Translations under genes and position numbers: made by a program | From: Octopus sinensis | Lineage: Eukaryota | Direction: 5' to 3' | NCBI RefSeq assembly: GCF_006345805.1 | Contig: NW_021835428.1 | Span: 1-40,257 of the forward strand | DNA length: 40,257 bases | In this document: positions 1-33,350 of the stretch, one piece after another | How the letters are laid out: each line of letters opens with the position of its first letter | Position numbering within the stretch: the first letter of the stretch is position 1 | The notes under the pieces: model-generated | Told to the model about the DNA's origin: nothing | Databases searched by the model: none | What the model saw: only the letters and a program-made list of their open reading frames with translations

Positions 1-112
1 CACTCACAAGGCTTTGGTCGGCCCGGGGCTATAGCAGAAGACATTTGCCCAAGAACCCGGAACCATGTGGTTTGGTGAGCAAGCTACTTACCACATAGCC
101 ACTCCTACGCCT
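1..112 (-). mobile_element. SINE family A, 5' half (tRNA-like head), with internal ~19-bp deletion
   Basis: Reverse complement matches the head of the full copies at 16542 and 25647 (aggcgtaggagtggct..gtggtaagtagcttg..catggttccgggttc); lacks agtcccactgcgtggcacc. Confidence 0.85.
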
Positions 113-113
113 A

Positions 114-125
114 CATACATACATG

Positions 126-168
<43 letters not shown>

Positions 169-172
169 AGAT

Positions 173-206
<34 letters not shown>

Positions 207-716
207 AGCATCTATCTGTTCATCTATTTATTTATCTAGGTATCTATCTACATGTCTGTCTGTCTGTCTATCTGTATGCTTAAGTAAATATGTATATGTA
301 TCTCTTCAGTCATGGATCTATGTAATTGCAAGTTATATGTACGTGCGTATGTACATGCATACGTGTGTGTGTATGAATATATATATATGTATGTATATAT
401 GTATATGCATGTTTGTATGTATGTATGTATGTATGTATGTATGTATGTATGTATGTATGTATGTATGTATGTATACTTGCCTGCATGTATATTTGTGTGT
501 GTGTGCATGTATCTGTTTGTGTGTACACACACACACATACACACACACACACACACAAACACACACAAACACACATGCACACACATACGCACACAAGACC
601 TAGGTTTAACGAATTTAAGATTTATTAACGACGATGGTAATGATGACGACGATGATGACGACGACGATGATGATTATGATGACGATGACGACGACGACGA
701 CGACGACGCTGACGAC

Positions 717-752
<36 letters not shown>
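114..752. repeat. Compound microsatellite block: (TA)n, (TATG)n, (CA)n, (GAT/GAC)n
   Basis: Directly visible arrays at about 121-210, 415-476, 524-596 and 628-752. Confidence 0.95.
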
Positions 753-1240
753 ATATTGCCACTATGTATTCGCAATATAATACTCTTCAAATACAGCGTG
801 AAGAAAAGGAAGAAAAAGTGATATATGATATTTTATTAAAGTTCTATTATTGTATATTGTGCAGTAATGTTCGCTTTATTAAAGCACTTTCGCATTAAAG
901 ACGAATAGTTCTTTACCTTCAATTTAACGGTGTTTGAACTCTAACGGACACGTTTTTCCACCCCTTATTGGTCCGTTAAATATATAGGACATGTGTGTGT
1001 GTATATATATATAGTTATATTTATATAATACAAAATACACAGATATATCTTGAGATTGCTAGTAATAACAATACTCAAATATAATACAGAATGGCGTGTA
1101 GTGCTCCAAATGAGCTATATGCCGCTTCTTAATTTGAGCGGAGGCAATGCGACCAGGAACTAAAGGAACATTACTAAGATCCACACTGAATCTTAAATAT
1201 TTATATATATTATACGATTTTTATCTACTTATATATATTA

Positions 1241-1636
1241 CTAGCAGTATCGCCCGGCGTAGCTCGGGTTTGTAAGGGAAATAACTATATAAGCATTTTT
1301 AGAGAGTTATAGCCAAAAATAGCAAAAAAATGCATTAAAAATGGGAAAAAAAATTATGGGAAATTTTTTTTTAAATCGTTGACTCATCGTAGACATTTTT
1401 AGGAGTTACTTCCTTTATATAATAGCGAAAAATGCATTAAAATGGAAAAAAATGATGGTAAATTTTTTTTTAAATCGTAGACTCATCGTAGACGCGCGCT
1501 AATACCCAGAAGGGCTCGATATGAATCACGACTATAAGATACCCGGTTTTGGTTAAACTGCACCGCAAAATGTGGGAGTAGTTAGGAATCTAAATCGTAG
1601 GAGACAGACACACAACTTCACTTTTATATATAAAGA
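1241..1636 (-). mobile_element. Non-autonomous Helitron, family H1, copy 1
   Basis: Minus strand starts TC(tttatatataaaag) and ends CTAG, with subterminal hairpin cccg-agctacgc-cggg about 12 nt before the end. Near-identical to the copies at 19332, 24567 and 27574. Internal ~95-bp tandem duplication. Confidence 0.85.
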
Positions 1637-1814
1637 CTATATTTATACATGTCGAATTTTATATCTGTTCTGTAGATATAATTGAATATGTGAATATATG
1701 TATGTATTTGATCTTTGAGTGTGGGTCTTAATAATGTTCCTTTAGTTCCTGTTTGCATAGCCACTCCTAAGCCAATAAATTTAATTTTGGCAGGGTTTGA
1801 ACACAGAAAATAAA

Positions 1815-2065
1815 GAGCAAGAACAAATACCACAAAGCATTAATGATACATTGGTACCAAATTTTGGCGCAAGGCCAATAATTTCGGGGAATGACTAAGT
1901 CAATTACATCGACCTCAGTGTTCAACTGGTTCATAGTTTATCGACGCAGAAAGGATGAAAGGAAAAGTCGATTTCGGCAGATTTTGAACTCAATGTAAAG
2001 ACGGGCGAAATACCGCAAAGTATTTTGCCCGATGCGCTAACGATTCTGCCAGATAACTGCCTTGT
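1815..2065 (-). mobile_element. SINE family E (degenerate)
   Basis: Shares cgaaaggatgaaaggcaaagtcgacctcggcggaatttgaac core and ctggcagaatcgttagc head with the copies at 3.1, 30.4-32.2 and 33.4 kb. Confidence 0.8.
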
Positions 2066-2100
2066 AATAACCTATATATTAATCTCTTTGTTTGTTCCTT

Positions 2101-2370
2101 CTGGAGCCATGCCTAGCTCATAAGGGCCAGTTTCCCGGTTTCCTTGGTGTATAGGTTCCCCACCTGGACGAGATGCCAGTCCGTCGCAGGTGAGCTGCAA
2201 GATGCAGGAGAAAGAGTGAGAGAAAGTTGTGGCGAAAGAGTCAGCAGAAGTTCGCCATTACCTTCTACCGGAGCCGCGTGGAGCTTAGGTGTTTCGCTCA
2301 TAAACATACACATCGTCCGGCCTGAGATTAGCGAATCCGCTACTCTAACCACTAGGCCATGTGCTTCCAC
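2101..2370 (-). mobile_element. Chimeric SINE (family C body plus family B tail)
   Basis: Head gtggaagcacatggcctagtggttagag; body ctccacgcggctccgg as in 7989; tail gaaaccgggaaactggccc as in 5321. Confidence 0.7.
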
Positions 2371-2767
2371 ATTAATCTCTTTACTGGTACAATAATATCT
2401 TCTTTCTTATATACTTTTCCTATCAAGCATCAGAAGCTTCTCTTTACAATGAAAGGAACAGTTTTAATTAATTTAAATGAAATAACTTGGTCAGGAAATA
2501 TAATTTTGATCACAGACAAATGCAGTAAGGTGCCATTAATACGGTAGCAAATTAACAGATTTGCAAGTAAATATTTTTATATATAAATAATGATATGATT
2601 ATATGAATGTTTTAATATAAACAGTATTTTATCCATTTAGCCTATAATCGAACTGGTTGTTAGTTTAACATGTATGCAAAGTTTCGTCAAGAATGGTTCA
2701 CTAGTGTAGGTTGCAAGATGGTAACAGACAGAAATTGCCATTTATATAAATATATGTTATTTTATTT

Positions 2768-3059
2768 ATGCGCCCTTTTCAAGCGTAGCCAGGCTCATGG
2801 GCCCGGTCTCCCGGTTTTAATGGCGTATGTGTTCCCCCCAGCTGTCCATCGCAGCGTTACTCAAGAAACAGGAAGAAATAGTGAGAGAAAGTTGTGGCGA
2901 AAAAGTACAACAGGGGTGGCCACCACCCCCTGACGGAGCCTCGTGGAGCTTTAGGTGTTTTCACTCACTAAACACACACAACGAGCAGTCTGGGAATCGA
3001 AACCGCGATCCTCCGACCGCGAGTCCGCTGCCCTAACCAATGGGTCATTGCACCTCCAC
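2768..3059 (-). mobile_element. Chimeric SINE (family C head and body plus family B tail)
   Basis: Head and body match 7989-8190; the 3' part matches 5470-5570 (gaaaccgggcccatgagcctggct..aaaagggcgcat). Confidence 0.8.
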
Positions 3060-3129
3060 ATATAAAGATATATATAAACAAAACTTATATTACATCGAGC
3101 TGTTTCTAATTCATATTTGAATATATATT

Positions 3130-3330
3130 ATTTTCTACTCAAAGCACAAGGCCCGAAATTTCAAGGCCTGAGATTAACCCCAGTACGCAACTAGTACTTA
3201 ATTTATCGACCCCGAAAGGATGAAAGGCAAGGTCAACCTAGGCGGAATTTGAACTCAGAACGTAGCGGCAGACGAAATACCACTAAGCATTTCGCCCGGC
3301 GTGCTAACGTTCCTGCCAGTTCGCCGCCTT
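3130..3330 (-). mobile_element. SINE family E
   Basis: ggcgaactggcaggaacgttagcacgccgggcgaaatgcttag head plus family E core. Confidence 0.85.
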
Positions 3331-4280
3331 AATATTTGAATATATATATATATATATATATACATATACACACACACACACACACAGGTGTAGAAAGGCA
3401 GATATACACAATAGTATGTACACAAAAGGGTGAAAAGGGTGTAATAACATGGTTTCTAATAAAGATGCAAAGTAAGTAGTTAACGAAAATACTGATACAT
3501 TTTTAACTTGAGAAAAGTCTTGCATATTTTTACTGTTCCACTTACAGATAGTATTTGTAATGTGTAAGTTACTTGGTTGATTTCTTTTTCTCAAAATCAA
3601 AGTTGATCCAAACTGTCAGTTAAACATTTACTCACAAACAAAGTTGCACGAATTGTTATTCTTATAAATGTAAATTTGTGATCTGTGTATGGAAGCTGGA
3701 GATTTCGAAGCAGTTGTCCAGATTTATCTTATGTCTCTTTAGTTTTCAAACAGATATTCACTTCAAGAGGACGCCTGACCTCTCTAACAGCACATACTTT
3801 TAGTTGTCAATCCTAAACCCGGTCTGTTATGCTTACACTCGACATATGTTTTCATGGGAATGTTCAGCTGGTATTCCGTGCGTTGATATTTGTGTATATA
3901 CGTATGCTCTGCCTCAAAGACAGATTAAAGATTAAAAGGATATCGTTTCTCCTTTTTCTTTCTCTATCGATACATATATATCGGTATCTTTACTGATGTG
4001 GGAGTGAATGAGTATGTATTCGTATTGACGTCATTCATAAATTTTTCCGTTTCATGAATGGCCGAAAATTACATTACCACATTGATACAGCAATCAACAT
4101 TTTTTTTAGTGTTCAGAGCTCCAGGAACAAGAAATGAACTGAAGGTTATTTTAAGCAAAAGGACATGAGCTTAAGAGTACATTAGTCGGAACATTTTGCT
4201 CTATAATGTTCCTTATTCGCTAAAATCGCCGAATATGCAAACAGATTTCGAATTATAGTATGTGCATTCATTCAAACGCG

Positions 4281-4301
4281 CATATATATATATAATGTAT
4301 A

Positions 4302-4339
<38 letters not shown>

Positions 4340-4345
4340 ATATAT

Positions 4346-4413
<68 letters not shown>

Positions 4414-4420
4414 TATATAT
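4281..4420. repeat. (TA)n microsatellite
   Basis: Directly visible. Confidence 0.95.
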
Positions 4421-4805
4421 AGTGTACAGAATACTATTATGGTATCAATAATAAGGTTAATTAGAAGAAATGAAGTAATTGTTCCTTAACTTATTTATAT
4501 ACATGTACTGGGAGTCTTCAAATTTCTAAAGAAATGAAATAGAAAGGAATAAAACAAAATAAAATAGAATAAAACAAAAAATAACATGAAGATGGATGTT
4601 TCGCTTATTACATTTGAGATAACTTGGATGCAATAACGTAAATATTCTATTTTATTTTATTTTATTTTATTTATTTTAATTTATTTTCTTTCCTTCCATT
4701 TCATTTCATTTTCTTGGCGAATTTAAATAATCTCTGTATCTGTATATAAGTATATTAAAGAACAATTCCTTCATTTCTACTGGCTACACGCATACACATA
4801 CACAT

Positions 4806-5110
4806 GCACACGCGCACGCACACACATATACATATATTGTACATATATATATATATATACATAATACATATATATATACATATATTGTACATATACATAT
4901 ATATATACATATATTGTACATATACATATATACATATATTGTACATATACATATATATATATACATATATTGTACATATACATATATATATACATATTGT
5001 ACACATACATATATATATACATATATTGTACATATACATATATATATACATATATGTACATATACATATATATATACATATATTGTACATATACATATAC
5101 ATATATATAT
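4806..5110. repeat. Microsatellite-derived minisatellite, ~24-31-bp unit (atattgtacatatacatatatatatac)
   Basis: Anchor motif tattgtac/tatgtac recurs about 9 times with variable TA spacer. Confidence 0.85.
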
Positions 5111-5320
5111 AATATACTATATATATATAATATATATATATATATATTATATAATAAGTGCGTGTGTGTGTGGTGTATATATTTATATATATATATACAT
5201 ATATATGAATTTGCATAGATAGATATATGTATATATGAACATATATGTGTATGTATATTTATGTATGTATATGTATGTGTATGTGTGTGTGTGTGTGCGT
5301 GTGTGTATGTGTGTGTGTGT

Positions 5321-5570
5321 GTGGAGGCGCGTGGCTTAATGGTTAGGGGGGCAGCATCATGATCGTAAGATTGTGGTTTCGATTCCTGGACCGGTCGACG
5401 CGTTGTGTTCTTGAGCAAAACACTTCATTTCACGTTGCCCCAGTCCACTCAGCTGGCAAAAGTGAGTAACGCTGCGATGGACTGGCGTCCCGTCCAGCTG
5501 GGGAACACATACGTCATAGAAACCGGGAAACCGGGCCCATGAGCCTGGCTAGGCTTTAAAAGGGCGCATT
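5321..5570 (+). mobile_element. SINE family B (tRNA-like head, CORE-like box, tail)
   Basis: A-box-like tggcttaatggtt, B-box-like ggtttcgattcc, then tgtgttcttgagcaaaacactt resembling the CORE-SINE box; T-rich end. Confidence 0.85.
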
Positions 5571-5585
5571 TATTTTTTATTTTTT

Positions 5586-5625
<40 letters not shown>

Positions 5626-5869
5626 CATACACACTCATATACATACGCATACACTCACAGACATACATATATGTACGTGTGTTCGTGCGTGTGTGTGTGT
5701 ATGGATATATTTACATAGATGTATGTGCGTGTGTATGTTTGAATGTATGTGTATATATGTGTGTGTGTATGTGTGCATGTGTATGTGTTGTGCGTGTGTG
5801 CGTGTGTGCATGCGTGCGTATGTGCGTGCGTGTGTGCGTATAGAGCGAGAGAGGGAGAGAACTAGTGAA

Positions 5870-6056
5870 GACTGCGGCCATGCTGGAGCACCGCCTTTAG
5901 TCGAGCAAATCGACCCCAGGACTTATTCTTTGTAAGCCTAATACTTATTCTATCGGTCTCTTTTGCGGAACCGCTAACTTACGGGGACGTAAACACACCA
6001 GCATCGGTTGCCAAGCGATGTTGTGAGGGACAAACACAGACACACAAACATATATA
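5870..6056 (-). mobile_element. SINE family A, 3' half
   Basis: Reverse complement of catcgcttgacaaccgatgctggtgtgtttacgtcccc..ggcggtgctccagcatggccgcagtc. Confidence 0.9.
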
Positions 6057-6209
6057 CACACACATACATAAATATGATGTTACTATAACTAGTTAATACT
6101 TTTCTATTGAAGTGTTTTTATAACTTTGGTATCTTTGTAAAAACTTGTATAACATGACATGTCTCCCCAACACCACCACCACCTTTACTTATCCAGCAGG
6201 GTTACTTTG

Positions 6210-7330
6210 AACGCCGGCAGTAAGCAAACTGCGACCACCCAGTTGGTCAGGAAATATAATTTCGGGGAATGGCTAAGTCAACTACATCGACCTCAGTGTT
6301 CAACTGCCGCTACGTTCTGAGTTCAAATTCTGCCGAGGTTGACTTTGCCTTTCATCCTTTCGGGGTCGATAAATTAAGTACTAGTTGCGTACTGGGGTTA
6401 ATCTCAGGTCTTGAAATTTCGGGCCTTGTGCTTTGAGTAGAAAATAATATATATTCAAATATGAATTAGAAACAGCTCGATGTAATATAACGCCGACAGT
6501 AAGCAAACTGCGACCACCCAGTTCCATATATATATGCTTCAACCACTTGAGGTGACATCCTATAGGCCTCTTTAAAATGTTGGAGAAAAATCTTAAATGA
6601 TTAGAAGGTTTATGGCAGGAAGAGCTCAAAGACCTTAACTAAAGATGCTTTTCCTGCTCTGCTTACACAGCTTCATGCTGCTTTCTTACACTCACAACAA
6701 GAATGTGGAAAGTGGGTTCATGAAATGTGGAATTCACCCTTTTCGTCCGGACAAAGTTTTGGATCAGCTACCAGACCGTGAGGTGAGCAAAGAAGACGAT
6801 AAAATCATCAGTGTAAGAGTTTTGGATGTTGTGTTGGGGACGCTAAAGTCAATGAGAGGAGTGGATGAGAGCAGACCAAAGAAGAGACGAAAGAAGTTGA
6901 ACGTTACCCCTGGCAAACGTATAAATGCTAAGGACATGAGTGCTTCAACAGTTATAGAGAAGCATGGAGAAAGAGCAGCAATTAGAATTAGCAAGATGAA
7001 GAGCTAAACTCTGTGGATAGTGATGTTTCTATGAATGAATGTGACAGGCACGCCGGTACTTCAGACATGGCAAGAGCAGAAAACACAGAAAGATGAAGAA
7101 GTTTTGCTGGAAATTTTATCATTGTGAGGCATGAAAAGCAAACATTTCCCGGTCAAGTGATTTCAACGGGAAGTGATGGTGCACTTGTGTCATCATTGGC
7201 AAAATGTAAAAAGATAGGGTGGAGGTGGCCACGACTGGGAAGACGTGGTAGAATTGTAAACAAAAAGGACTCCACTGAACAGCAGGGGTTTCTATCGATT
7301 CCCTGACCTTGAACAAGAATGGGGAATATA
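6210..7330 (+). pseudogene. Decayed pogo/Tigger-type (DDE_1) transposase, interrupted by the insertion at 6245-6488
   Basis: Conceptual translation with frameshifts gives LRPPSS..MLQPLEV..RPLK..WRKIL (DDE_1 LPPxxTHxLQPLDV-type motif), SGFMKCGIHPF, KKRRKKLNVTPGK and a C-terminal FPGQVI..DGALVSSL..GWRWP. Confidence 0.7.
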
Positions 7331-7510
7331 AAATGTGACTTACAGATAACTGTGATATTTTCTTTAGTGCTACAACACTTAAAGCTGTTAATTGACTTTT
7401 CTTTTGTATTTGTCAATAAAAAAACATTTTTATAACATTTTTAGATAGATATACACACACACATATATATGGATGTGAAATATCGAAGTTTTAATTCATC
7501 ATTTAATAAA

Positions 7511-7842
7511 GACCCCCTTCGGTCATGAATGGCCATGGGATTGCACCTAGAAAGTTACCCTCCTAGACACAAGTCCGGGCAAGCTTGTTTATGGAAGACC
7601 AGCAGTCGCCCATGCATACCAGCCTCCCCTCTCCACGCCACCAGTGTTATCCAAGGGAAAGACAAAGGTCGATACAGCTTGGCACCTGTGACGTCGCAAC
7701 TCATTTCTACACCTGAGTGAACTGGAACAACGTGAAATAAAGTGCTTTGCTCAAGAACACAACACGCAGCCCGGTCCGGGATTCGAGCTCACAACCTCAC
7801 GATCGTAAGCTCGACGCTCTAACCACTGAGCCATGCGCCTTC
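7511..7842 (-). mobile_element. SINE family F, full length
   Basis: gaaggcgcatggctcagtggttagagcgtcg head, gttcgaatccc-type B box, CORE-like box, tail ctaggtgcaatcccatggcc; second copy at 34001. Confidence 0.9.
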
Positions 7843-7988
7843 ACATCGTTTAATAGACCGCATATATTATTAGGGAGAAAATATCGAACACGATGGCCCG
7901 ATTGCGAGAGACCAAGAAAGAAAACGCGTTTTTCAAGCCATGAGAAACAACAGACAAACTTCATTCATGATGTCATTATATAGTCTCA

Positions 7989-8370
7989 GTGGAGGCGCAA
8001 TGGCCCAGTGGTTAGGGCAGCGGACTCGCGGTCGGAGGATCGCGGTTTCGATTCCCAGACCGGGCATTGTGAGTGTTTATTGAGCGGAAACACCTAAAGA
8101 TCCACGAGGCTCCGGCAGGGGGTGGTGGTGAACCCTGCTGTACTCTTTCACTACAACTTTCTCTCGCTCTTTCTTCCTGTTTCTCTTGTACCTGTATTTC
8201 AAAGGGCCAGCCTTGTCACACTCTGTGTCACGCTGAATCTCCTCGAGAACTACGTTAAGGGTGCACGTGTCTGTGGAGTGCTCAGCCACTTGCACGTTTA
8301 TATCACGAGCAAGCTGTTCCGTTGATCGTATCAGCTGGGACCCTCATCGTCGCAACCGATGGAGTGCTCC
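7989..8370 (+). mobile_element. SINE family C, full length
   Basis: tggcccagtggttagg A box, ggtttcgattccc B box; second copy at 10982. Confidence 0.9.
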
Positions 8371-9177
8371 TATATAGTGTGTGTGTGACTATTTCACAGA
8401 GAAATTTTTTCTACAAGATTGATGAGTGTGAGGTGACGTAGTTTTCAGCTCTTAGCGTTTAACGAAGATAGTTGCTGCTGCAGCATCTCACTGCTGCCGT
8501 GTGTAGCCGCCAAAACAAACACGTAAAAATCGAAATACGACTGATGTGAAAAAATTCGATGCTTCGTTGCGTATTTTCCTGTCTTCTCTTTGCTGCTGTG
8601 ATGACTCATATATTAATGTTAACTGATTACCAATCAGGAACTTTAAATGATCTGTTTAATGCCGATGTCTTCAGTTAATTTTGATGCGAGTTCGAAAGAC
8701 TTAATGAACGGCTCTGTGATGACGTCCTCAGTCAATTTGACGGGCATAAAAAAGACTTTGGTGGTCAGCTTTTTGTTGATGTCACCAATCAGTTTGATGT
8801 GTCTAGATGTTAATAAGAATTTCCTGATTCGAAATAATTAGTCTTTGGTTTCAGTTTTTGCAGAGACCCAGTAAATGTAAACACACTTGTGCGCGCGCAC
8901 ACAGACATACACGAGCGCACAGACATACACGCATGCGCACACACACACGTATCAATCTATCTGTCTATCTATCTATCTAATCCGTCTGTCTGGTTGTATG
9001 TATGTATTTATGCATGTATGTATGTATGTATGTATGTATTATATGGTTCAAAAATATACCAAAAATTTACTAAATTCACAGACAGATGAAAGAACGACAG
9101 TGTATATTAGTTTAACGCTGAGCAAAAATGAAAGAAGTTTTATTAAATTTCGAACACACACGCACGCACATACGTAT

Positions 9178-10598
<1,421 letters not shown>

Positions 10599-10608
10599 GT
10601 AGATAGAT

Positions 10609-10663
<55 letters not shown>

Positions 10664-10768
10664 CATACATACATACATACTACATACATACATACATGCA
10701 TACATACATACATACATACAAATATGCATGCATACATACATACATACATACATACATACATACATACA

Positions 10769-10799
<31 letters not shown>

Positions 10800-10800
10800 G
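10599..10800. repeat. (GATA)n then (CATA)n microsatellite
   Basis: Directly visible; (GATA)n to about 10663. Confidence 0.95.
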
Positions 10801-10981
10801 TAATTGTAATATCCACGGATCTAAGTATAGGAAGTTAATCTTCGAGCATTCCGTGTTAGGAATAAAAAAAACTTCCAGGAACAATAATAGTTTATTAAAG
10901 CAGAAGGTTCTAGGCTTTTCCCATGTCGAAGTTCGATAAGCTGAAAACAGTTCTTTTTTACTTCACGGTTAGCAAATGGAT

Positions 10982-11376
10982 GGAAGCATTCTGTCGGTTA
11001 CGACGACGAGGGTGCCGGTTGATCCGAATCAACGGAACAGCCTGCTCGTGAAATTAACGTGTAAGTGGCTGAGCACTCCACAGACACGTATACCCATAAC
11101 GTAGTATCTTGGGGATATTCAGCGTGACACAGAGAGTGACAAGGCCGGTCCTTTGAAATACAGGTACAACAGAAACAGGAAGTAAGAGTGAGAGAAAGTG
11201 AAAGAGTACAGCAGGGATCACCACCATCCCCTGCCGGAGCCTCGTGGAGCTTTAGGTGTTTTCGCTCAATAAACACTCACAACGCCCGGTCTGGGAATCG
11301 AAATCACAGTCTTATGATTCCGGTACAGGAAACCACAATCCAACACCCACCTAACCACTAAGTCATATGGCTCCAC
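10982..11376 (-). mobile_element. SINE family C, degraded head
   Basis: Reverse complement aligns to 7989-8370. Confidence 0.85.
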
Positions 11377-11643
11377 AATGCATACATATACATTCGCACA
11401 ACACACAATATAAAGTCTTGCGGTATAAAGCTTTTAGAATCTTCCGATAGATATGAAATAAATTATTTTTAATGGTGGAAGTCAAAGTAGGCAAAGCTAT
11501 AAATTACAGCGTATAAAGCATTGGTTTAAAAACCTCTACTTCTTATCATTCGAACTTTCTCAATTCTTCTCGTGTAAACATCTTACAGTTCACGCTGGCA
11601 ATTACTGAGCTTCTAAAATGGATGGAGAATATTCGAGTTATTA

Positions 11644-11710
11644 TCCCGGTATAATGGTTAGTAGGTCTGACATGTTCACAATAAACTTGGGTTCGAGTTC
11701 CACGGACAGC
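11644..11710 (+). pseudogene. Isolated degenerate tRNA-like sequence (tRNA pseudogene or orphan SINE head)
   Basis: A-box-like ggtataatggttag and B-box-like gggttcgagttcc at tRNA spacing; ttcac loop reminiscent of tRNA-Glu(TTC); cloverleaf stems do not pair well. Confidence 0.3.
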
Positions 11711-11752
11711 CTTCGACTTTTTCCTATCCAATAGAGGGGTATATGTTATTAA

Positions 11753-11880
11753 GGCGTCGAGATGGCAGAATCGTTAGCACGCCGGGTGAAATGCTTAGCA
11801 ATATTTCGCCCGTCGCAGCGTTCTGAATTCAAATTCCGTCGAGGTCGACTTTACTTTTCATCCTTTCGGGGTCGATAAAA
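11753..11880 (+). mobile_element. SINE family E, 3'-truncated
   Basis: ggcgtcgagatggcagaatcgttagcacgccggg head plus core. Confidence 0.85.
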
Positions 11881-11889
11881 TAGCCCAAT

Positions 11890-12290
11890 GTTATACATAC
11901 TTTTATTTATAGTTTCCTCCGCTTCGAATTCGACCAGTAAAATCAATTTTCTACAAAATATAAAATTAGTCTTGACAGAGGCTTTGAGTTTCGCCAAACA
12001 GCTTATTCAGGTACTGGAGTTCAATAAGCCTCTAATAAACTTAATGTCCTGAATTTGACTCTAGTTTCAGTATTGAGGCCATTCATCAGAAAATGGGTTC
12101 GAAATTCCACCAGAACACCTGATAAAAGCTGGAGAGTACATCAGCCGAAATGTTGTGATAACAACAAACAAGGTGAGGACATCTATCCGTCCATTGTAAA
12201 CAATGTACATAATTCCTCATCTCAAAAATAGTGAACAGTATTATGCTCCGTTGTTATTTTAAAACTTGTTTTAGAATAAGGAGCTCAGTC
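11890..12290. mobile_element. Probable Penelope-like element (PLE) terminal-repeat remnant with degenerate hammerhead motifs on both strands
   Basis: Plus strand aacac-CTGATAA-aagctg..cagcc-GAAA-tgtt-gtgat (12114-12159); minus strand ttt-CTGATGA..GAAAC-taga-GTC-aaa (12092-12054). Confidence 0.45.
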
Positions 12291-12357
12291 TATCCACACA
12301 CACATATGCATACATAAACATATACATACATATACATATATATATATACAAACCGTT

Positions 12358-12422
12358 TCATAAGGCCTGGTTTCCCGGTTTCATGGCGTATAGATTCCTC
12401 ATCTGGATAGGACGCCGGTTCA
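12358..12422 (-). mobile_element. SINE family B tail fragment
   Basis: ggcctggtttcccggtttcatggcgtat matches the reverse complement of the family B tail. Confidence 0.6.
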
Positions 12423-12464
12423 CCATTTGGCTATGTGTGTGTGTGTGTGTGTGTTGTATATGTA

Positions 12465-12663
12465 CCTTATTCCTGTTCGTCGGACAGTTTTGGTTGTGAA
12501 ACCAAAACCGTCCAACGAATGAGAACGTGAAACTCTGAGTAACAGTTTTTGTGATGCCTTTGCAGCTTCATTAATAAAATATATTACTCTACTTCCGGTA
12601 TTCGAGTACTACTTTTTTCCATCTTGTTTCACATTTATGTACTTTCTCTGGTATACATACGCG

Positions 12664-12694
<31 letters not shown>

Positions 12695-12875
12695 TGTTAT
12701 GCTTGGGAGCGGTCATATTTTTTCAGTTAAACACACACACTGTATATTTGGCCTTCACTTCAGCTTTTTACTATTATTTTACTTTCCTTGTCAAAGTTCT
12801 TTCGTGACACATCCTGTAACCTCCTCAGCGACTCTCTATCCCACGTGTCTCCTTTTGTTCTGCTTATTCCATTTT
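12465..12875 (+). mobile_element. Probable PLE-derived remnant with 19-bp hairpin and decayed hammerhead-like motif
   Basis: ttcgtcggacagttttggt / accaaaaccgtccaacgaa inverted pair overlapping cCAACGA..GAAAC-tctga-GTA. Confidence 0.35.
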
Positions 12876-12882
12876 CAGACGT

Positions 12883-13113
<231 letters not shown>

Positions 13114-14671
13114 TTTGCCTCGCTGTATGTCCATCTAAGTAGCAATGAGTTGCCAACCCGAGCATGCTTTATTGTGAAATCTTAGGTTTACAAATTATCA
13201 TCTCTACTAGAAATAACGTTCAATCACACGTGAAATGAATAAACTCAAAGCACAAATCAGCCATTAATTTCTTTTGCGAAGAAAATTCCAAGAAAAAAAA
13301 AAACATAACAAACAGTATCTACTTTGAGTTCAACGACCTTACAGCATTCTAGACCACCCACAATACAGTACAAGTTTTTTTTTCCGTTATGTATAGTTAT
13401 TGTCATTGTCTTCCTGTATGTTGTTGTTGTTGTTGTTATAGTTTCCGATGTTTACATTCAGGTGCATCATCGATTTTCTGGAATCTTTGGTTTGGTTCCA
13501 AATCCTTTACATATCGTTTTTTTTCCTCCTTTTTTTTTTTTTTTTTTTTTTTGAACCAGGAGTGGTTACCTTGGTCAACACGCTCTAAATTAAACGAAAT
13601 ACAGGTACTTGCACATTAGTGTAAATTAGTGCGGATTATAAGAGGTACCCTACCATCAGTGTCTGAGAAGTCGGTGTTGTACCCGTATCTATATATAATC
13701 TGCGTAGCGAGACCAGTTCCCGTGACCTTTTTTTTATTGATAATAGAGGTGATGTTGAAGGCGATGTGGCGTGGTAGAACAATAGTCATAATGGTACGGT
13801 GGTAGTGGTGGTGGTGGTGGTGGCCATCGTCGTTGTCATGTTGGAGATGTCGATATGGCAATGGTGTTTCTGATGCTTGTGTTGGTGGTAATGCAAAAGC
13901 CTGCGGATCTTTTGTTTGCCTGCCACTTTTCAATTTCTTCAATTTTTGTTCAAGTTTATTTCATATTTGGCGTATTGGTGTAGTTTTGTAAAGTAAGCAT
14001 TAACGTAAAATTCATTTTCGCCATAAATTAATAAATAAAGAGTTAATAGCTTTTAAAGTTTACAAATTTTGGGTAGTTAGCAGCCTGTTTCCATAGTAGT
14101 AACAAGCAAAGCTGTTACCAAACTGCTTACGACATGTTTTTTTTTGGGGGGGGGTCGTTTATTAACTACTTAAAACATGTGGTATGAAGTGATCATCAGA
14201 TCTGCTTAAAATAACAGCTAAATAAGCCTTAAATCACGCACGAAAAATTGTTTTTGCCTTTTAACATAATTGTATGAATTCTCGAGTGTAGATTCTGAAA
14301 ATTTCAAAAAGTAACAAAATTATGAGGGGTTATATGGCGTGCGTGAAGCAGAATTCCACCAATATTTCATTTGTTTACAGTTTCAAACACTTGTTGTGAA
14401 GAACAAAATGACAGCTTCTAAATCCTGTATTCTGATTGGATAAAAATTATCAAGCTTTAAACCCCTGTGTGTTTTTTTTCTGTAAAAAGTGAATTATCTC
14501 CTGAGATTCAGCGTGGAAAATTGTATCACTGCAACAAATTTTAATATTTTCACTAAAATTAAAAATTCCCACAGGTGCAAACAGAAAAGGTCCAAGGGTA
14601 CTGCTTCGCCTTGGCGGTAGCGCCCTCTGCAAAATATTTTTTTAAAATCCTACATTACGCAGCTTGAGAGT

Positions 14672-15574
14672 TATACTCACATGACCCGAAATAACTGACA
14701 AAAAGAGACAAGAAGGTGTCAAGAAGGTGGAGGTAGCATGAATAAATTAAGATCATAACATGCCGGCGGGAAATAACATCACTAGGTGAGACAAGCTGAC
14801 ACTGAATCAGCTTCGCTGACTGACAGGTGACGGTCGTTTAGAGAATGCGCGGGCTAAGACTACGCGCCTTCACTAGTCAGTGAAGGTGAGACAGTGTCAC
14901 GTGACAACTTGCTGGGGATGCCTGCTGGAGCCTAGCGGCATGTATTTAAAGGAAAAAAATTGACAAGTCAGTCAGTCACCGGCTGACACTCGCTGACGAT
15001 ACATTGAAGAGGCCAGGGAACAGAAGAAAGAAGAAAGAAGACATGCACCCAACACCAGAGCTGAAGACACCTCCGAAAGGGGGAGCGCCACGTCAAAACG
15101 GTAGAGGAGTAGGGGCCGAAACCGGACGTGGTTCCTCCTGATGATGTCTTGAGCTAACTGGATCCTATAAAGGAGCTGTTGTGGTAGCAGACCACGAAAC
15201 ACGGTTGTAGTTCCTGCTGTAGTAAGAAGTAGAAGTGGACTTGTGTAAGACGTTTATTGCCTCACAATGGCTTTTTATGTTGCAAATATAAGAGGTTTAT
15301 TGCCTCCTTGATATTTTACTATGTAAGAGGTTTGTTGCCTCAATATGGTATTTATAAAGAACAATGTGCTCGGGTGAACAGCAATCGGCGGACGTTGCTG
15401 TTGCCTTTGTTATTATCATATCGTTTGTCATTCCATCTAATTATGTCCTGGTCCAGCCCGCAGCTTCTTTTCTTTGTAAGGCCTTTGTGGCCAATTTAAT
15501 GAATAAAAGAAGTGGAATAGGTTAACGAGGCTTCGTAAAACTGAAAACCCGATGCTGTTCGAATTCTTGTCACA
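14672..15574 (+). mobile_element. Solo-LTR-like sequence (tentative)
   Basis: TATA-like tgtatttaaagg at 14941 followed by gtcagtcagtca, AATAAA at 15502, end tgtcaca, gagt on both flanks (14668-14671 and 15575-15578); the 5' end reads TA rather than TG. Confidence 0.35.
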
Positions 15575-15685
15575 GAGTAGAATCCATTAACTGCTTTCCT
15601 AACTGTCAAACGGTTGCGCTAAACAAGACAACGTGAATAAGGTTATCTGCTGAAAAGAACGGTCACAATCCGTTACTGGATTATT

Positions 15686-15735
15686 ATGGTGGTGAGGGGT
15701 CAGGATGGTGGTGGTGGTTGTGGTGGTGGTGGTGG

Positions 15736-15784
<49 letters not shown>

Positions 15785-16006
15785 GGTGGTGGTGGTGATG
15801 ATGATGGTGGTGGTGGTGGTGGTGGTGGTGGTGGTGGTGGTGGTGGTGGTGGTGTGGTGGTGATGATGATGATGATAATGATGATGATGATGGTGGTGGC
15901 GGCGGTGGTGGTGGTGGTGGTGGTGGTGATGATGATGATGATAATGATGATGATGGTGGTGGTGGTGGTGGTGGTGGTGGTGGTGGTGGTGGTGGTGGTG
16001 GTGATC

Positions 16007-16038
<32 letters not shown>

Positions 16039-16075
16039 AATGGTGAAGATGATGATGATGATGGTTGTGGAAGTG
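15686..16075. repeat. (GGT)n/(GAT)n trinucleotide mosaic
   Basis: Directly visible. Confidence 0.95.
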
Positions 16076-16541
16076 GTGGTGGGAGGAGGAGAAGAAGCAG
16101 GTGGTGAATGTGGTGAGTGGCGGGGAGAGAAGAAGCAGGAATAAGACAAGGGACCGGATTCACAGTTATTTCATTTCATCTGTAAAAGTAAACGAGTAAA
16201 TAGGATGCGATTGTTACTCAATTTGTTCGGTGAAGCGGAATGTACAGATTAGATGATGGTTTGACCCGATGTGACTGGAGTTCACTCGAGCTGACCTCAG
16301 TTAATCTGCATTGACCTCTGTTGAATGAGTGAGTGAGTGAGTGAGTGAGTGAGTAAGGGTGGGCGGGTGGTAGGGATGTAGGTATGGACGAACGGAGGGT
16401 GAGAGGGAGTTTGGAGTATCTCCTCTTTGTTTACGAAATACTTCCTACAATGAATATCCAAGCGCAATCGCAACAAGCATCTGCATAACATATTAGGCGA
16501 CATCTACGAGCACACGTGATGCATACACGTACTTATAATAT

Positions 16542-16715
16542 GGCGCACTGGAGTGGCTGTGTGGTAAGTAGCTTGCTTACCAACCACATGGTTCCGGGTT
16601 CACTCCCACTGCGTGGCACCTTGGGCAAGTGCCTTCTACTATAGCCTCGGGCCGACCAAAGCCTTGTGAGTGGATTCGGTAGATGGAAACTGAAAGAAGC
16701 CCGTCGTATATATGC

Positions 16716-16790
<75 letters not shown>

Positions 16791-16996
16791 TGTGTCTGTG
16801 TTTGTCCCTCCCACCATCGCTTGACAACCGATGCTGGTGTGTTTACGTCCCTGTAACTTAGCGGTTCGACAAAAGAGACCGGTAGGATAAGTACTAGGCT
16901 TACAAAGAATAAGTCCTGGGGACGATTTGCTCGACTAAAAGCGGTGCTCCAGCATGGCCACAGTCAAATGACTGAAACAAGTAAAAGAGTAAAAGA
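16542..16996 (+). mobile_element. SINE family A, full length with internal (TG)n
   Basis: Head ggagtggctgtgtggtaagtagcttg, B-box-like ggttccgggttcactccc, central (TG)n, tail gcggtgctccagcatggccacagtcaaatgactgaaacaa(gtaaaaga)n. Confidence 0.92.
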
Positions 16997-17742: not shown

Positions 17743-18375
<633 letters not shown>

Positions 18376-19099
18376 GTATTTAATACAACTTAGTCATTAT
18401 AGAAATTGTACATACATGCTATTTGTCAATATGGTGGCGAACATTTCACGCGTGTTAAACAGATTCAGACTGTTGAAAATTTTTTCTTTGCTATAAAGAA
18501 TGGCGATACAATGTTTCGTTCACCTTTTGTTCAAATAGAATGGTTATTTCGAGAAGTCAACATGTATAATATTTTTAGTAATTTGGAAGATAACGGCAAA
18601 ATTATACTCACTTGTTAAATATTTGGGGTTGTTTTTCAAAGAATTATTTTTTTTCTTTTGTCTTTGCTGTAAACACATTTTGAATTCTATTTAAATTTTT
18701 ATAAGGAACACACTATCCATTATAAATATAGTTTTCTTTTATAAATATAAATTCCCACGGCTGTACGGAAGAATGGTAAAGTCGAAACACATCTCAGGGA
18801 AACATAAGCAATTGTTTGAAGAAGAAAATTTTCAATATAAGTTAATTTTGTCAAACTCACGATGTTTCATACATTTTCTCAAAACAACTCTTAAAGTTTT
18901 TTTAATTTTATTTATACATATTTTTTTTTTAATTTACCCAATACACATGTTATTATTGAAAAGCAGATACTTTCACCGATAGCAAAAACAAAGTGAAGAC
19001 AGCATATCTTTCAGTTTCTTTTCATTGGTTCCTTGTTTTTGGTCTTTGAAAACGTTTATCCTTAATTGAAGGTCAATGGGAAACCAGCCATTCGTTCGG

Positions 19100-20103: not shown

Positions 20104-21178
20104 GATTTGATTTTGATTTTGATTTTTCCAGTTTCAGCTAATGAGCTGTGGCCATGCTGGGGCACCGCCATTTGGTTTGCTACACGGTTTTACCTCACGG
20201 ATGCTTTTTAGCAAACGCCATCTGATGCATGAGAGAGTTCGATGCAGCTGCCCTCATCTGCACCTCCTGCCGTGGAGTTGGTTCATCCGGAACACCTGAC
20301 AGGAAGAGATCCAGTCCTACTTTAAAGACATCCGCATCTACACCATGCAGGTCCCTCAGGTTCTTCGGGAGGATATTGAAGAGCCGCGGGCCTCTGAAGC
20401 CCAGGCTATCACAATATCTTGTCCTACATCTTGATGGCAAATTGGGAGTCCTTGGTACTACGCAGTGGCGTCCGGTTCTGGCATTTGTGTGACTCTCGAT
20501 GCCAAAGTCTGGGACAAGACCTTCCAGGATCTTCCAGATATATATTATGGCATATCTTTCTCGCCTACGCTCCAGGGAATAGAGCTTTAATCTCTTGAGT
20601 CTCTCCCAGTAGCTCATATGCTGCACAGAGGCTATCTTCTTCGTGTAGCTTCGTTGGATCGCCTCAAGTTCTGTGATCAGCTTGACACTGGATGGTGACC
20701 ATAGCTGAGAGCAATAGTCAAAGTGGCTTAGGACAAGTGTCTTCCAGAGGACCATCATGGTTTCTTGTTCTCTTGTTCTAAAGGTTCTAAGAATCCATCC
20801 AGCCAGCCGTCTACATTTCATTGTCAGTTTAGCAACATGTACATGAAAGGTCGCGTCATCACTCATGTGAATACCCAGGTCACGCACTGTTTGTGCGTCT
20901 GGGATTGCAATCCCTCCGGGTTCAGTGTATTCATTGGGTATTGCATTCAGTTTTGCATGCTGATAGTATAAAGCTTGAAACTTTTCAGCATTGAACTGCA
21001 TGCTATTCTTTTCAGCCCACTTGTATATTTCGTCCAGCTCACATTGCAGGTGCTTAGTGTCTTCAGGGTTCTGTATTGCCTGTGAAACTTTTGTATCATC
21101 TGCATAACTTGTGATCGTGGCTCTCTGCGTGGCTGAGGGCATGTCTGAGAGGGCCATTATGAACAGTAGTGGTCCCAA

Positions 21179-25646: not shown

Positions 25647-26044
25647 AGGCGCAGGAGTGGCTGTGTGGTAAGTAGCTTGCTAACCAGCCACATGGTTCCG
25701 GGTTCAGTCCCACTGCGCGGCATCTTGGGCAAGTGTCTTCTGCTATAGCCCCGGGCCAACCAATGCCTTGTGAGTGGATTTGGTAGACGGAAACTGAAAG
25801 AAGCCTGTCGTATATATGTATATATATGTATGTATGTGTGTGTATATGTTTGTGTGTCTGTGTTTGTCCCTCTAGCATTGCTTGACAACCGATGCTGGTG
25901 GTTCGGCAAAAGAGACCGATAGAATAAGTACTGGGCTTACAAAAGAATAAGTCCCGGGGTCAAGTTGCTCGATTAAAAGGCGGTGCTCCAGCATGGCCGC
26001 AGTCAAATGACTGAAACAAGTAAAAGAGTAAAAGAGAGTAAGAG
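25647..26044 (+). mobile_element. SINE family A, full length with small internal deletion
   Basis: Head to (gtaaaaga)n tail; lacks tgtttacgtccccgtaacttagcg. Confidence 0.92.
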
Positions 26045-26051
26045 TATATAT

Positions 26052-26120
26052 ATAGATCAATAAATAGTGGGGTTGTGTTGACCGCACGTGGAGAAATGAT
26101 AAGCAAGGAAAAATTGTAAA
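26052..26120. mobile_element. 69-bp outer arm of the same foldback element
   Basis: Reverse complement of 25548-25616 with 1 mismatch. Confidence 0.8.
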
Positions 26121-26151
26121 TATATATATGTATATATATGTACACATATAT

Positions 26152-26516
26152 ATATGTATGTATGTATGTATGTATGCATGCATGCATGTATGCATGCATG
26201 TATGTATGTATGTATGCATGCATGCATGCATGTATGCATGTATGTATGTATGTATGTATGTATGCATGCATGTATGTATGTATGTATGTATGCATGCATG
26301 TATGTATGTATGCATGCATGTATGTATGTATGCATGTATGTATGTATGTATGTATGTATGTATGGATGCATGTATGTATGTATGTATGCATGTATGCATG
26401 TATGTATGTATGCATGTATGTATGTATGTATGTATGTATGCATGTATGTATGTATGCATGTATGTATGTATGCATGCATGTATGCATGCATGTATGTATG
26501 TATGTATGTATGTATG

Positions 26517-26545
<29 letters not shown>
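26152..26545. repeat. (TATG/CATG)n microsatellite
   Basis: Directly visible. Confidence 0.95.
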
Positions 26546-26547
<2 letters not shown>

Positions 26548-27530: not shown

Positions 27531-27573
27531 CAATCTTAGGCCTCGGCGTCAGATATTCTCGTTTTAATTGTAA

Positions 27574-33306: not shown

Positions 33307-33350
<44 letters not shown>

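What the first reader, a model, noticed from the sequence alone, without database searches (positions are those of the whole stretch)
6210..6523. Patchwork templated insertion copied from three nearby loci and bracketed by a 35-bp duplication
A 35-bp direct repeat (6210-6244 and 6489-6523, 1 mismatch) lies in the pogo transposase LxPP..QPL motif and encloses 244 bp made entirely of local copies. 6243-6262 equals 2487-2506 (20/20, same strand). 6256-6306 equals 1878-1928 (2 mismatches, same strand). 6304-6490 is the reverse complement of 3085-3271 (4 mismatches in 187), including the unique non-SINE flank at 3085-3130. Every junction is a microhomology (tt, ataattt, ctg, aa). Serial microhomology-mediated template switching (FoSTeS/MMBIR, or polymerase-theta-type templated insertion) is established to make such patchworks. 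Inference: one repair event sampled DNA 3-4.4 kb away on both strands, then re-primed 35 bp behind the break. The ~2% divergence suggests an inherited germline event.
Basis: partly seen in the sequence, partly recalled or inferred. Interest (0 to 1): 0.75.

Follow-up and report, generated by a model that had tools for sequence, protein, structure and literature searches.

The report
Patchwork templated insertion in octopus transposon
In one octopus lineage, error-prone repair of a break in a dead transposon deleted 28 bp, duplicated 35 bp and added 244 bp copied from three sites 3-4.4 kb away; this is a clean, datable example of a known repair process, not a new kind of element.

Summary
A 35-bp direct repeat (1 mismatch) brackets 244 bp built entirely from three local copies. 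These are 2487-2506 (20/20), 1878-1928 (49/51) and the reverse complement of 3085-3271 (183/187). The junctions have 2, 7, 3 and 2 bp of microhomology.

The window is Octopus DNA. The collinear locus in O. vulgaris (L001) has all three donors but an empty target: one copy of the 35-mer region and no insert. That empty site is ancestral. It keeps 28 bp, also present in a paralogous transposon copy, that both window 35-mers lack.

The ancestral site is a transposon-borne palindrome with 16-17-nt arms. The 28-bp deletion starts in its hairpin loop, and the deletion joint lies inside the duplicated unit.

My best reading is one two-ended break repair at the palindrome centre. An aborted first joint at CCG was extended from both ends, which gives the 35-bp duplication. 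Three ectopic priming steps followed, then a final AA joint. A scripted replay reproduces 411 bp with 7 substitutions and no indels.

The event is germline and about as old as the split from O. vulgaris. It is a known kind of event (SD-MMEJ/TMEJ, MMBIR-type templated insertion), unusually well resolved here.

The parts
6070..6209 (+). 5' part of a non-autonomous (internally deleted) pogo-type transposon, up to the duplicated unit
   Evidence: 93% identical to L002 4447-4540, and 89% to L002 4541-4576 for window 6179-6214. Collinear with O. vulgaris L001.
6197..6212 (+). Surviving left arm (CAGGGTTACTTTGAAC) of the transposon's palindrome. The right arm is deleted in this lineage.
   Evidence: Paralog L002 has a 16-bp stem (-19 kcal/mol, z -5.95). 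O. vulgaris ortholog L001 9775-9810 gives z -3.4. The window sequence no longer folds (z -0.7).
6210..6244 (+). Left copy of the 35-bp duplicated unit. It consists of 7 nt (AACGCCG) left of the 28-bp deletion joint plus 28 nt to its right. The CCG joint is at 6214-6216.
6243..6262 (+). Templated segment A, a copy of 2487-2506 (20/20). It shares TT with the 35-mer and ATAATTT with B.
6256..6306 (+). Templated segment B, a copy of 1878-1928 (5' part of a SINE), 49/51. Both differences are private to the insert.
6304..6490 (-). Templated segment C, an inverted copy of 3085-3271 (46 bp of unique flank plus the first ~140 bp of a SINE), 183/187.
6489..6523 (+). Right copy of the 35-bp unit, with the same deletion joint (CCG at 6493-6495). 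6496 A is a private substitution.
6524..7407 (+). 3' part of the transposon: a degraded transposase C-terminal reading frame (QPLE motif at ~6538-6549, 120-aa ORF at 6645-7007).
   Evidence: 82-85% identical to L002 5813-6745. Octopus-only protein homologs P0001-P0006. DDE_1 hit in the paralog.
2487..2506 (+). Donor of segment A, in non-repeated DNA. Intact and 100% conserved in O. vulgaris.
1878..1928 (+). Donor of segment B, the 5' part of the SINE copy at 1878-2076. Intact and 100% conserved in O. vulgaris.
3085..3271 (+). Donor of segment C: unique flank 3085-3130 plus the SINE copy that runs on to ~3334. It is intact. One substitution is private to the donor, at the position matching insert base 6344.

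Best explanation
This is a derived, germline, one-off deletion-duplication-insertion made by iterative microhomology-primed DNA synthesis during repair of a break at the centre of a transposon-borne palindrome.

Shown:
- The ancestral site, as in O. vulgaris, read L-a-d-b-R. Here a = AACGCCG, d = 28 bp and b = 28 bp.
- The window reads L-a-b-[A][B][C]-a-b-R.
- The donors are intact, so the process copied rather than cut.

Inferred order of steps:
1. The palindrome (16-17-nt arms, 3-nt loop GCC) formed a hairpin or cruciform and was cut in or near its loop. The left end then terminated in ...AACGCCG.
2. That terminal CCG paired with a CCG 28 nt into the right end. This removed the right arm of the palindrome plus 12 nt.
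3. Both 3' ends were extended across this weak joint. The left end copied 28 nt (b) and the right end copied 4 nt (AACG). The joint then fell apart, so both ends now carried the same 35-mer.
4. The free end primed again at TT (2487, 18 nt copied). It then primed at ATAATTT (1878, 44 nt), and then at CTG on the opposite strand (3271, about 182 nt).
5. The terminal AA paired with the tip of the other end, and the break was sealed.

This is synthesis-dependent MMEJ / polymerase-theta-type end joining in logic. Its long, distant tracts are more typical of MMBIR-type template switching.
For: - L001 is collinear with window 1-16580 at roughly 89-99% identity per aligned block. Window 6216 corresponds to L001 9795 and window 6493 to L001 9821, so L001 has one 35-mer region and no insert.
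- All three donors are present at the corresponding positions in L001.
- Polarity: the 28 bp missing from both window 35-mers are present in L001 and in paralog L002. The empty site therefore cannot be a secondary loss by recombination between the 35-mers.
- The 28-bp deletion is the only non-microsatellite deletion of >=20 bp found among the 85 in-alignment indels plus the unaligned stretch at the site, over 16 kb. It lies inside the 35-bp unit. Chance co-location is about 63/16000 = 0.004.
- The deletion's left edge (L001 9793-9796) falls in the loop (9792-9794) of a palindrome. The palindrome folds with z = -5.95 in L002 and z = -3.4 in L001.
- A scripted replay of the five steps from the inferred ancestor reproduces window 6150-6560 (411 bp) with 7 substitutions and no indel.
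- Microhomology is present at all five joints; the product of chance probabilities is 9e-8.
- Age: there are 6 private substitutions in 279 bp of new DNA, against a window-lineage rate of 1.5% since the split.
[quoted passage not shown] Germline templated inserts are described for polymerase theta (PMC4490562). [quoted passage not shown]
Against: - No third species or haplotype was available, so a pre-existing 28-bp deletion allele cannot be excluded.
- Tracts of 44 and ~182 nt copied from 3-4.4 kb away are longer and more distant than typical polymerase-theta inserts. In the papers read, those inserts came from close to the break. In the yeast model of MMBIR, templates lay within 100 bp.
- Hairpin cleavage is inferred only from the position of the breakpoint. 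A 16-bp-arm palindrome is small for cruciform extrusion in eukaryotic chromatin.
- Palindrome conservation rests on only two copies, L001 and L002.
- Which end synthesised which segment cannot be told.
- No read-level data were available for the assembly.
Confidence: 0.6

Rival explanations
1. Two separate events occurred. First, a palindrome-associated 28-bp deletion (CCG slippage or MMEJ) became fixed or polymorphic. Later, a replicative FoSTeS/MMBIR event happened. In that event a nascent 3' end left the template at 6244, copied A, B and C, and re-primed 35 bp upstream.
For: - Each step is simple and well documented.
- It needs only four switches for the insertion.
- Tract lengths rise 18 -> 44 -> 182 nt in one direction. 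By my own knowledge of the Hastings et al. 2009 model, that fits a low-to-high processivity picture of MMBIR.
- Indels are frequent in this region: 85 in 16 kb.
Against: - It requires two rare, non-microsatellite rearrangements within the same 35 bp in the same short lineage. Chance is about 0.004.
- After the first event the palindrome was destroyed, so the presumed fragile structure was already gone (z -0.7).
- It offers no reason why the duplicated unit should straddle the deletion joint.
Confidence: 0.27
2. The insertion was reverse-transcriptase mediated. A LINE enzyme jumped between RNA templates (chimeric retrocopy or twin priming), and the 35-bp repeat is a target-site duplication.
For: - Two of the three pieces are SINE sequence.
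- The insert is flanked by a direct repeat.
- LINE remnants are present in the window.
Against: - No SINE 3' end, poly(A) or microsatellite tail lies at either end of the insert.
- Segments B and C contain only SINE 5' parts.
- Segment C includes 46 bp of upstream flank of one particular SINE copy, and segment A is unique non-SINE DNA.
- Both strands of one 1.4-kb region are used.
- Both copies of the 'TSD' carry a 28-bp deletion relative to the ancestral target. Target-primed insertion does not produce that.
Confidence: 0.03
3. The 244-bp composite is a mobile or pre-formed unit. It could be a small non-autonomous element, or an extrachromosomal patchwork fragment captured at a staggered break.
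For: Capture of free DNA fragments at breaks is known. The 2-bp end microhomologies would also fit plain end joining.
Against: - The insert has no terminal inverted repeats.
- No second copy of the composite or its junctions exists in the window, L001 or L002, about 73 kb in all.
- No protein-level trace of junction-spanning ORFs is in the database.
- Its parts match unique local DNA at 98-100%.
- A staggered cut would not explain the shared 28-bp deletion.
Confidence: 0.05
4. The structure is an assembly or library artefact, such as a chimeric read or misjoin.
For: No read data could be examined. The region is very repeat-rich.
Against: - The new DNA differs from its templates by 7 substitutions and no indels. 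An artefact built from reads of the donors would be identical to them.
- Four ordered microhomology junctions plus a flanking duplication are not a known assembler failure mode.
- One difference (6344) retains the state seen in O. vulgaris while the window donor has changed. That implies real, independent history.
Confidence: 0.05

Closest known systems
[quoted passage not shown] 2015, PMC4490562)
   Same: - A small deletion at the break.
- 2-7-bp microhomology at every joint.
[quoted passage not shown]
- Flank sequence duplicated across the junction.
- Germline occurrence and evolutionary fixation.
   Different: - Three of the templates lie 3-4.4 kb away rather than next to the break.
- One tract is ~182 nt, far longer than usual for such inserts.
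- Enzyme dependence is untested, and the octopus POLQ gene was not examined here.
MMBIR / FoSTeS templated insertions, 'complex MMB-TI' class (Osia et al. 2021, PMC8421209; Hastings et al. 2009, from my own knowledge)
   Same: - Serial template switches at microhomology.
- Use of both strands.
- Up to five templates per event reported in human germline variants.
- Return to the original locus.
- Donors retained.
- Tract length increasing with successive switches.
   Different: - The shared 28-bp deletion in both 35-mers is awkward for a single-ended, purely replicative path.
- The detection signature used in that work took its template distance (within 100 bp) from the yeast model.
- No copy-number change of large segments occurs here.
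Palindrome- or hairpin-induced breakage (Mre11-Sae2/CtIP or SbcCD cleavage at hairpin loops; Lobachev et al. 2002, Eykelenboom et al. 2008, from my own knowledge)
   Same: The breakpoint maps to the loop of a near-perfect palindrome, and one arm is lost in the product.
   Different: Arms of only 16-17 bp. Cleavage was not observed, only inferred from position.
Abortive gap repair / 'filler DNA' in DNA transposons (Rubin & Levy 1997 for Ac/Ds, from my own knowledge)
   Same: - A DNA transposon interior carries a patchwork of nearby sequences joined at microhomologies.
- The same element already has an older internal deletion with a microhomology joint.
   Different: - The element was already a dead fragment, fixed at this locus in the common ancestor with O. 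vulgaris.
- The break is internal, at a palindrome, not at the excision ends.
LINE-mediated chimeric retrocopies / L1 twin priming
   Same: An insert containing SINE sequence, partly inverted, flanked by a direct repeat.
   Different: - No 3' tail.
- Includes untranscribed flank and unique DNA.
- The 'TSD' carries a deletion relative to the empty site.

Membership tests
Templated insertion by microhomology-primed template switching (general class: SD-MMEJ/TMEJ, MMBIR/FoSTeS) | Every inserted base can be assigned to a template elsewhere, and the templates remain intact (copying, not moving). | tested here: met
   All 244 bp are assigned. The donors are intact and conserved in O. vulgaris.
Templated insertion by microhomology-primed template switching (general class: SD-MMEJ/TMEJ, MMBIR/FoSTeS) | Microhomology at each junction beyond chance. 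| tested here: met
   TT, ATAATTT, CTG and AA, plus CCG at the deletion joint. The product of chance probabilities is 1.4e-6 for four joints and 9e-8 for five.
Templated insertion by microhomology-primed template switching (general class: SD-MMEJ/TMEJ, MMBIR/FoSTeS) | An ancestral 'empty' allele lacking the insert exists. | tested here: met
   O. vulgaris L001 9760-9860. It is polarised as ancestral by paralog L002.
SD-MMEJ / polymerase-theta end joining | A two-ended break with a small deletion, and flank sequence copied in trans from the other end, giving repeats that span the junction. | tested here: met
   There is a 28-bp deletion. The 35-mer equals 7 nt of the left flank plus 28 nt of the right flank around the CCG joint, and it is present on both sides. 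This is consistent with the feature, not proof of it.
SD-MMEJ / polymerase-theta end joining | Templates lie in the immediate flanks and tracts are short (tens of nt). | tested here: not met
   Segments A, B and C come from 3.0-4.4 kb away, and C is 187 nt.
SD-MMEJ / polymerase-theta end joining | Dependence on POLQ. | not testable with these tools
   Needs genetics.
MMBIR / FoSTeS | A single-ended break or stalled fork whose nascent strand returns to the original template and continues processively. | tested here: inconclusive
   The return to the locus is seen. However, a return to an ancestral-type template would re-copy the 28 bp that both 35-mers lack. It works only if the deletion pre-existed.
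MMBIR / FoSTeS | Dependence on replication or BIR factors. | not testable with these tools
   Needs experiments.
LINE-driven retro-insertion (TPRT, twin priming, chimeric retrocopy) | A 3' tail (poly(A), microsatellite or SINE 3' end) at one end of the insert, and insert limits that match transcript limits. | tested here: not met
   No tail is present. Segment C carries 46 bp upstream of the SINE start, and segment A is unique DNA.
Mobile composite element | Multiple copies with the same internal junctions, and terminal repeats. | tested here: inconclusive
   No terminal inverted repeats. No second copy in about 73 kb of Octopus DNA on hand, and no protein-level hit. A whole-genome search was not possible.
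pogo/Tigger-type DNA transposon (identity of the host element) | DDE_1 (PF03184) transposase domain with an N-terminal HTH. | tested here: met
   The local remnant has no Pfam hit. Paralog L002 hits DDE_1 at E=1.2e-9, 38.5 bits against a cut-off of 22. Distant relatives of its N-terminal ORF carry HTH_psq.
pogo/Tigger-type DNA transposon (identity of the host element) | Terminal inverted repeats and a TA target-site duplication. | not tested
   The element ends were not defined. No convincing TIR was found in 5900-7700.

The most novel reading that the evidence does not exclude
The 35-bp palindrome carried by this pogo-type family is a recurrent fragile site in octopus genomes. Its breakage would repeatedly seed long-range, multi-template patchwork insertions. 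SINE fragments and unique DNA would then be dispersed by DNA repair rather than by retrotransposition, as a systematic contributor to the mosaic repeat landscape of cephalopod genomes.
Probability: 0.1. Interest if true: 0.6.

Novelty: new member of a known kind. Interest (0 to 1): 0.4.

Why it matters
Natural, fixed examples of multi-template repair insertions are rarely resolved this fully. Here we have the ancestral allele, all donors, every junction, an approximate age and a plausible initiating structure.

The case shows long-range (3-4.4 kb), long-tract (up to ~182 nt) templated synthesis combined with the flank-duplicating signature of SD-MMEJ. That bears on whether 'TMEJ' and 'MMBIR' products are really separable from sequence alone.

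It also warns annotators that SINE fragments in inverted or truncated form can arise without retrotransposition. There is no sign of functional consequence: the target is a dead transposon remnant in repeat-rich non-coding DNA.

Tried and rejected
1. Rfam scan of the whole window: no family found, so the SINEs are not recognisable RNA families.
2. Pfam on a frame-stitched translation of the local transposon remnant: no hit. The 'pogo' label had to be tested through a paralog instead.
3. Exact look-ups of four window ORFs, to find the source assembly or independent assemblies of the same species: none on record. The window's species is therefore unidentified. It is Octopus, with about 2.7% substitution divergence from O. 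vulgaris over 16 kb.
4. Protein search with the two junction-spanning ORFs (6159-6320 +, 6381-6629 -), to find independent support for the junctions or further copies of the composite: nothing. This test is weak, because such ORFs are rarely annotated.
5. Search for more Octopus paralogs of the transposon's 5' half, to test palindrome conservation: only distant non-Octopus relatives at 37-52% identity.
6. P0002's locus could not be fetched because the gene range was too long.
7. Error-prone synthesis as the source of the insert's private substitutions. There are 6 in the new DNA against 1 in the donors (binomial p = 0.125). At most ~4.2 are expected from the lineage rate. The excess is not significant, so the claim was dropped.
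8. A purely replicative one-event path: rejected, because it needs the identical 28-bp skip twice.
9. Loss of the insert in O. vulgaris by recombination between the 35-mers: rejected, because O. vulgaris keeps the 28 ancestral bp that both 35-mers lack.
10. Terminal inverted repeats on the insert or the transposon: none convincing.

Full report
**1. The observation**

I re-read the region and the three proposed donor sites and compared them by script and by BLAST of 6150-6600 against the window. Every statement of fact in the finding holds.

- The 35-mers 6210-6244 and 6489-6523 differ at one base (6217 G vs 6496 A).
- 6243-6262 equals 2487-2506 (20/20, same strand).
- 6256-6306 equals 1878-1928 with 2 mismatches.
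- 6304-6490 is the reverse complement of 3085-3271 with 4 mismatches in 187.

The bases just outside each match disagree. The overlaps between neighbouring segments are therefore exactly TT, ATAATTT, CTG and AA, and no inserted base is left unexplained.

The matches are far beyond chance, with E-values of 4e-91, 8e-19, 6e-5 and 1e-11. With the local composition, the joint chance of microhomologies of at least 2, 7, 3 and 2 bp is about 1.4e-6.

Segments B and C are partly SINE sequence. The local donors are nevertheless clearly the best matches available. About nine other SINE copies in the window and five in another Octopus locus reach only 82-93% over the SINE part of C, against 97.9% for 3085-3271. 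The 46-bp flank 3085-3130 matches nothing else.

**2. Where the window comes from, and the host element**

A frame-stitched translation downstream of the site has only Octopus homologs. The best is P0001, a hypothetical protein of O. vulgaris.

I fetched P0001's locus as L001 (GCA_951406725.2, OX597824.1). It is collinear with window 1-16580 at roughly 89-99% identity per aligned block, through unique DNA, microsatellites and several different repeats. It is the orthologous locus of a close relative, or a very divergent haplotype. Substitution divergence is about 2.7%.

I could not identify the window's own species. No window ORF is on record.

The local transposon remnant gives no Pfam hit. 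A longer paralog in O. vulgaris, L002, has ORFs with the motif ICLPTNSTHMLQPFDVAFYGPLKK. These hit DDE_1 (PF03184) at E = 1.2e-9. Distant relatives of its N-terminal ORF carry HTH_psq. The host is therefore a pogo-type element.

Compared with L002, the window and L001 copies lack about 1.2 kb of transposase. Their 5' ~145 bp is joined directly to the 3' part at ...CTGC|GACCAC.... So the host is an old, non-autonomous deletion derivative.

**3. The empty site, and which state is ancestral**

In L001, window 6216 aligns with 9795 and window 6493 aligns with 9821. There is one copy of the 35-mer region and no 244-bp insert.

The three donors are present at the corresponding upstream positions. 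A and B are 100% identical over 71 and 111 bp. C is 183/187.

L001 also has 28 bp that neither window 35-mer has: TTCAAATTAACCCCGACTACTGTTTCCG, at L001 9796-9823. This stretch is bounded by CCG on both sides. The paralog L002 has the homologous 28 bp.

The O. vulgaris state is therefore ancestral. The window lineage carries a derived 28-bp deletion, a 35-bp duplication and a 244-bp insertion. O. vulgaris cannot have lost the insert by recombination between the 35-mers, because that would leave it without the 28 bp.

**4. Age**

A three-way comparison gives the following.

- Segment C of the insert has 3 private substitutions and the window donor has 1. At that donor-private position the insert keeps the O. 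vulgaris state.
- One further position is shared by the insert and the window donor against O. vulgaris.
- Both B mismatches are private to the insert.
- The 35-mer mismatch is private to the right copy.

That makes 6 private changes in 279 bp of new DNA (2.15%).

With L002 as outgroup, the window lineage has accumulated 13/857 (1.5%) substitutions in the adjacent transposon since the split, against 0.8% for O. vulgaris. The event is therefore old, close to the time of the split, and inherited through the germline. The small excess over expectation (6 against at most ~4.2) is not significant. I make no claim for error-prone synthesis.

These substitutions, with no indels, also argue against an assembly artefact.

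**5. A likely trigger**

The ancestral sequence is a palindrome.

- In L002 it reads CGGGGTTACTTTGAAC-GCT-GTTCGAAGTAACCCCG. This is a 16-bp stem with a DNA folding energy of -19 kcal/mol and z = -5.95 against shuffles.
- In L001 it reads CGGGATTTACTTTGAAC-GCC-GTTCAAATTAACCCCG, with z about -3.1 to -3.4.

The window retains only the left arm (6197-6212) and no longer folds (z = -0.7). Allowing for the CCG ambiguity, the left edge of the 28-bp deletion lies at L001 9793-9796. That is in the 3-nt loop (9792-9794) or at the first base of the right arm.

Cleavage of hairpin loops into double-strand breaks is established biology in yeast and E. coli (my own knowledge; not tested here).

**6. One event or two**

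The 85 indels inside the aligned blocks between window and L001 over 16 kb are almost all microsatellite length changes. With the site's own unaligned stretch, the 28-bp deletion is the only non-repeat deletion of 20 bp or more found. It lies inside the 35-bp duplicated unit, with 7 nt to its left and 28 nt to its right. The chance of that co-location is about 0.004. Both 35-mers carry the identical deletion joint.

A purely replicative path has a problem. In it, the strand leaves the template, copies A, B and C, and returns 35 bp upstream. It would have to skip the same 28 bp twice, unless the deletion already existed.

A two-ended break model needs only one extra step, as follows.

1. The break occurs at the palindrome loop.
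2. The left end's terminal CCG pairs with the CCG 28 nt into the right end.
3. Both 3' ends are extended, by 28 nt and 4 nt.
4. The weak joint dissociates, so both ends carry the 35-mer.
5. The free end primes at TT, ATAATTT and CTG, copying 18, 44 and about 182 nt. The last tract is on the opposite strand.
6. The terminal AA pairs with the tip of the other end.

A script that replays these steps from the inferred ancestor reproduces window 6150-6560 (411 bp) with 7 substitutions and no indel.

This is the logic of synthesis-dependent MMEJ. [quoted passage not shown] Templated inserts of this general kind are polymerase-theta dependent in the C. elegans germline and contribute to natural variation (PMC4490562).

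The distance and length of the ectopic tracts are more like MMBIR-type events. [quoted passage not shown]

I give about 0.6 to the single-event version and about 0.27 to two sequential events. The rest is divided among retro-insertion, a mobile or captured composite, and artefact.

**7. Rivals rejected**

- **Retro-insertion.** No 3' tail is present, SINE 5' parts only are used, an untranscribed flank and unique DNA are included, both strands are used, and the 'TSD' carries a deletion.
- **Mobile composite.** There are no terminal repeats, no second copy in about 73 kb of Octopus DNA and no protein-level trace. A whole-genome search was not possible.
- **Artefact.** The insert has real, independent substitutions, including one where it preserves the ancestral base and the donor has changed.

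**8. Verdict**

It is refined in three ways: an accompanying 28-bp deletion, a palindrome at the break point, and a different origin for the 35-bp duplication.
- The phenomenon belongs to a known class. This is a new, unusually complete natural example in a cephalopod, with no evident functional effect.
- Interest is 0.4.

Noticed in passing
window 6070-7407; L002 4447-6745: The host transposon is an internal-deletion derivative. About 1.2 kb of transposase (L002 ~4577-5812) is missing. The old joint (...CTGC|GACCAC..., about 6228-6236) shows microhomology, is shared with O. vulgaris, and also lies inside the 35-mer.
   Followed up: partly
L002 4559-4593; L001 9775-9810: This pogo-type family carries a near-perfect 35-bp palindrome about 125 bp from its 5' end (z -5.95 in L002). 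Its function is unknown; it could be a transposase-binding site. Only two copies could be examined.
   Followed up: partly
protein P0002 (O. vulgaris, annotated SNAP-25-like isoform X6): The last ~130 residues of this annotated SNAP-25-like isoform are the C-terminal ORF of the same transposon family (65% identical to the window's). This is either an exonised transposon or an annotation artefact.
   Followed up: no
window 1-4300 vs 6493-16580 (against L001): Substitution divergence from O. vulgaris is 0.8-1.1% upstream, which includes the donor region, but mostly 2.3-2.9% downstream of the site. This two- to three-fold step is unexplained.
   Followed up: no
window 6524-6537: Immediately after the right 35-mer the window has CCATATATATATGC, where O. 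vulgaris has CCATACATATGC. This is a small (AT)n expansion at the edge of the rearrangement.
   Followed up: no
window 9702-10670 (-), 20195-21178 (-): LINE remnants are present: a zf-RVT hit (E 3.9e-8) and an RVT_1 hit (E 2.7e-6, just under the gathering score). The 169-aa ORF at 27077-27586 has no Pfam hit.
   Followed up: partly
window 30300-33720: A cluster of at least nine copies of the same SINE family in both orientations, 82-93% similar to the SINE part of segment C.
   Followed up: no
window 4750-5900, 15686-16149, 17900-18500, 25870-26670, 34267-35471: Long compound microsatellites (TA/CA-, GGT/GAT- and CATA-type) dominate the long 'ORFs' of the window. Most indels against O. vulgaris fall in such tracts.
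   Followed up: no
window 5870-6075; 16769-16965 (inverted): Another ~200-bp dispersed repeat abuts the 5' end of the transposon. It has further copies in L001 (1137-1351, 3382-3586). It was not classified.
   Followed up: no
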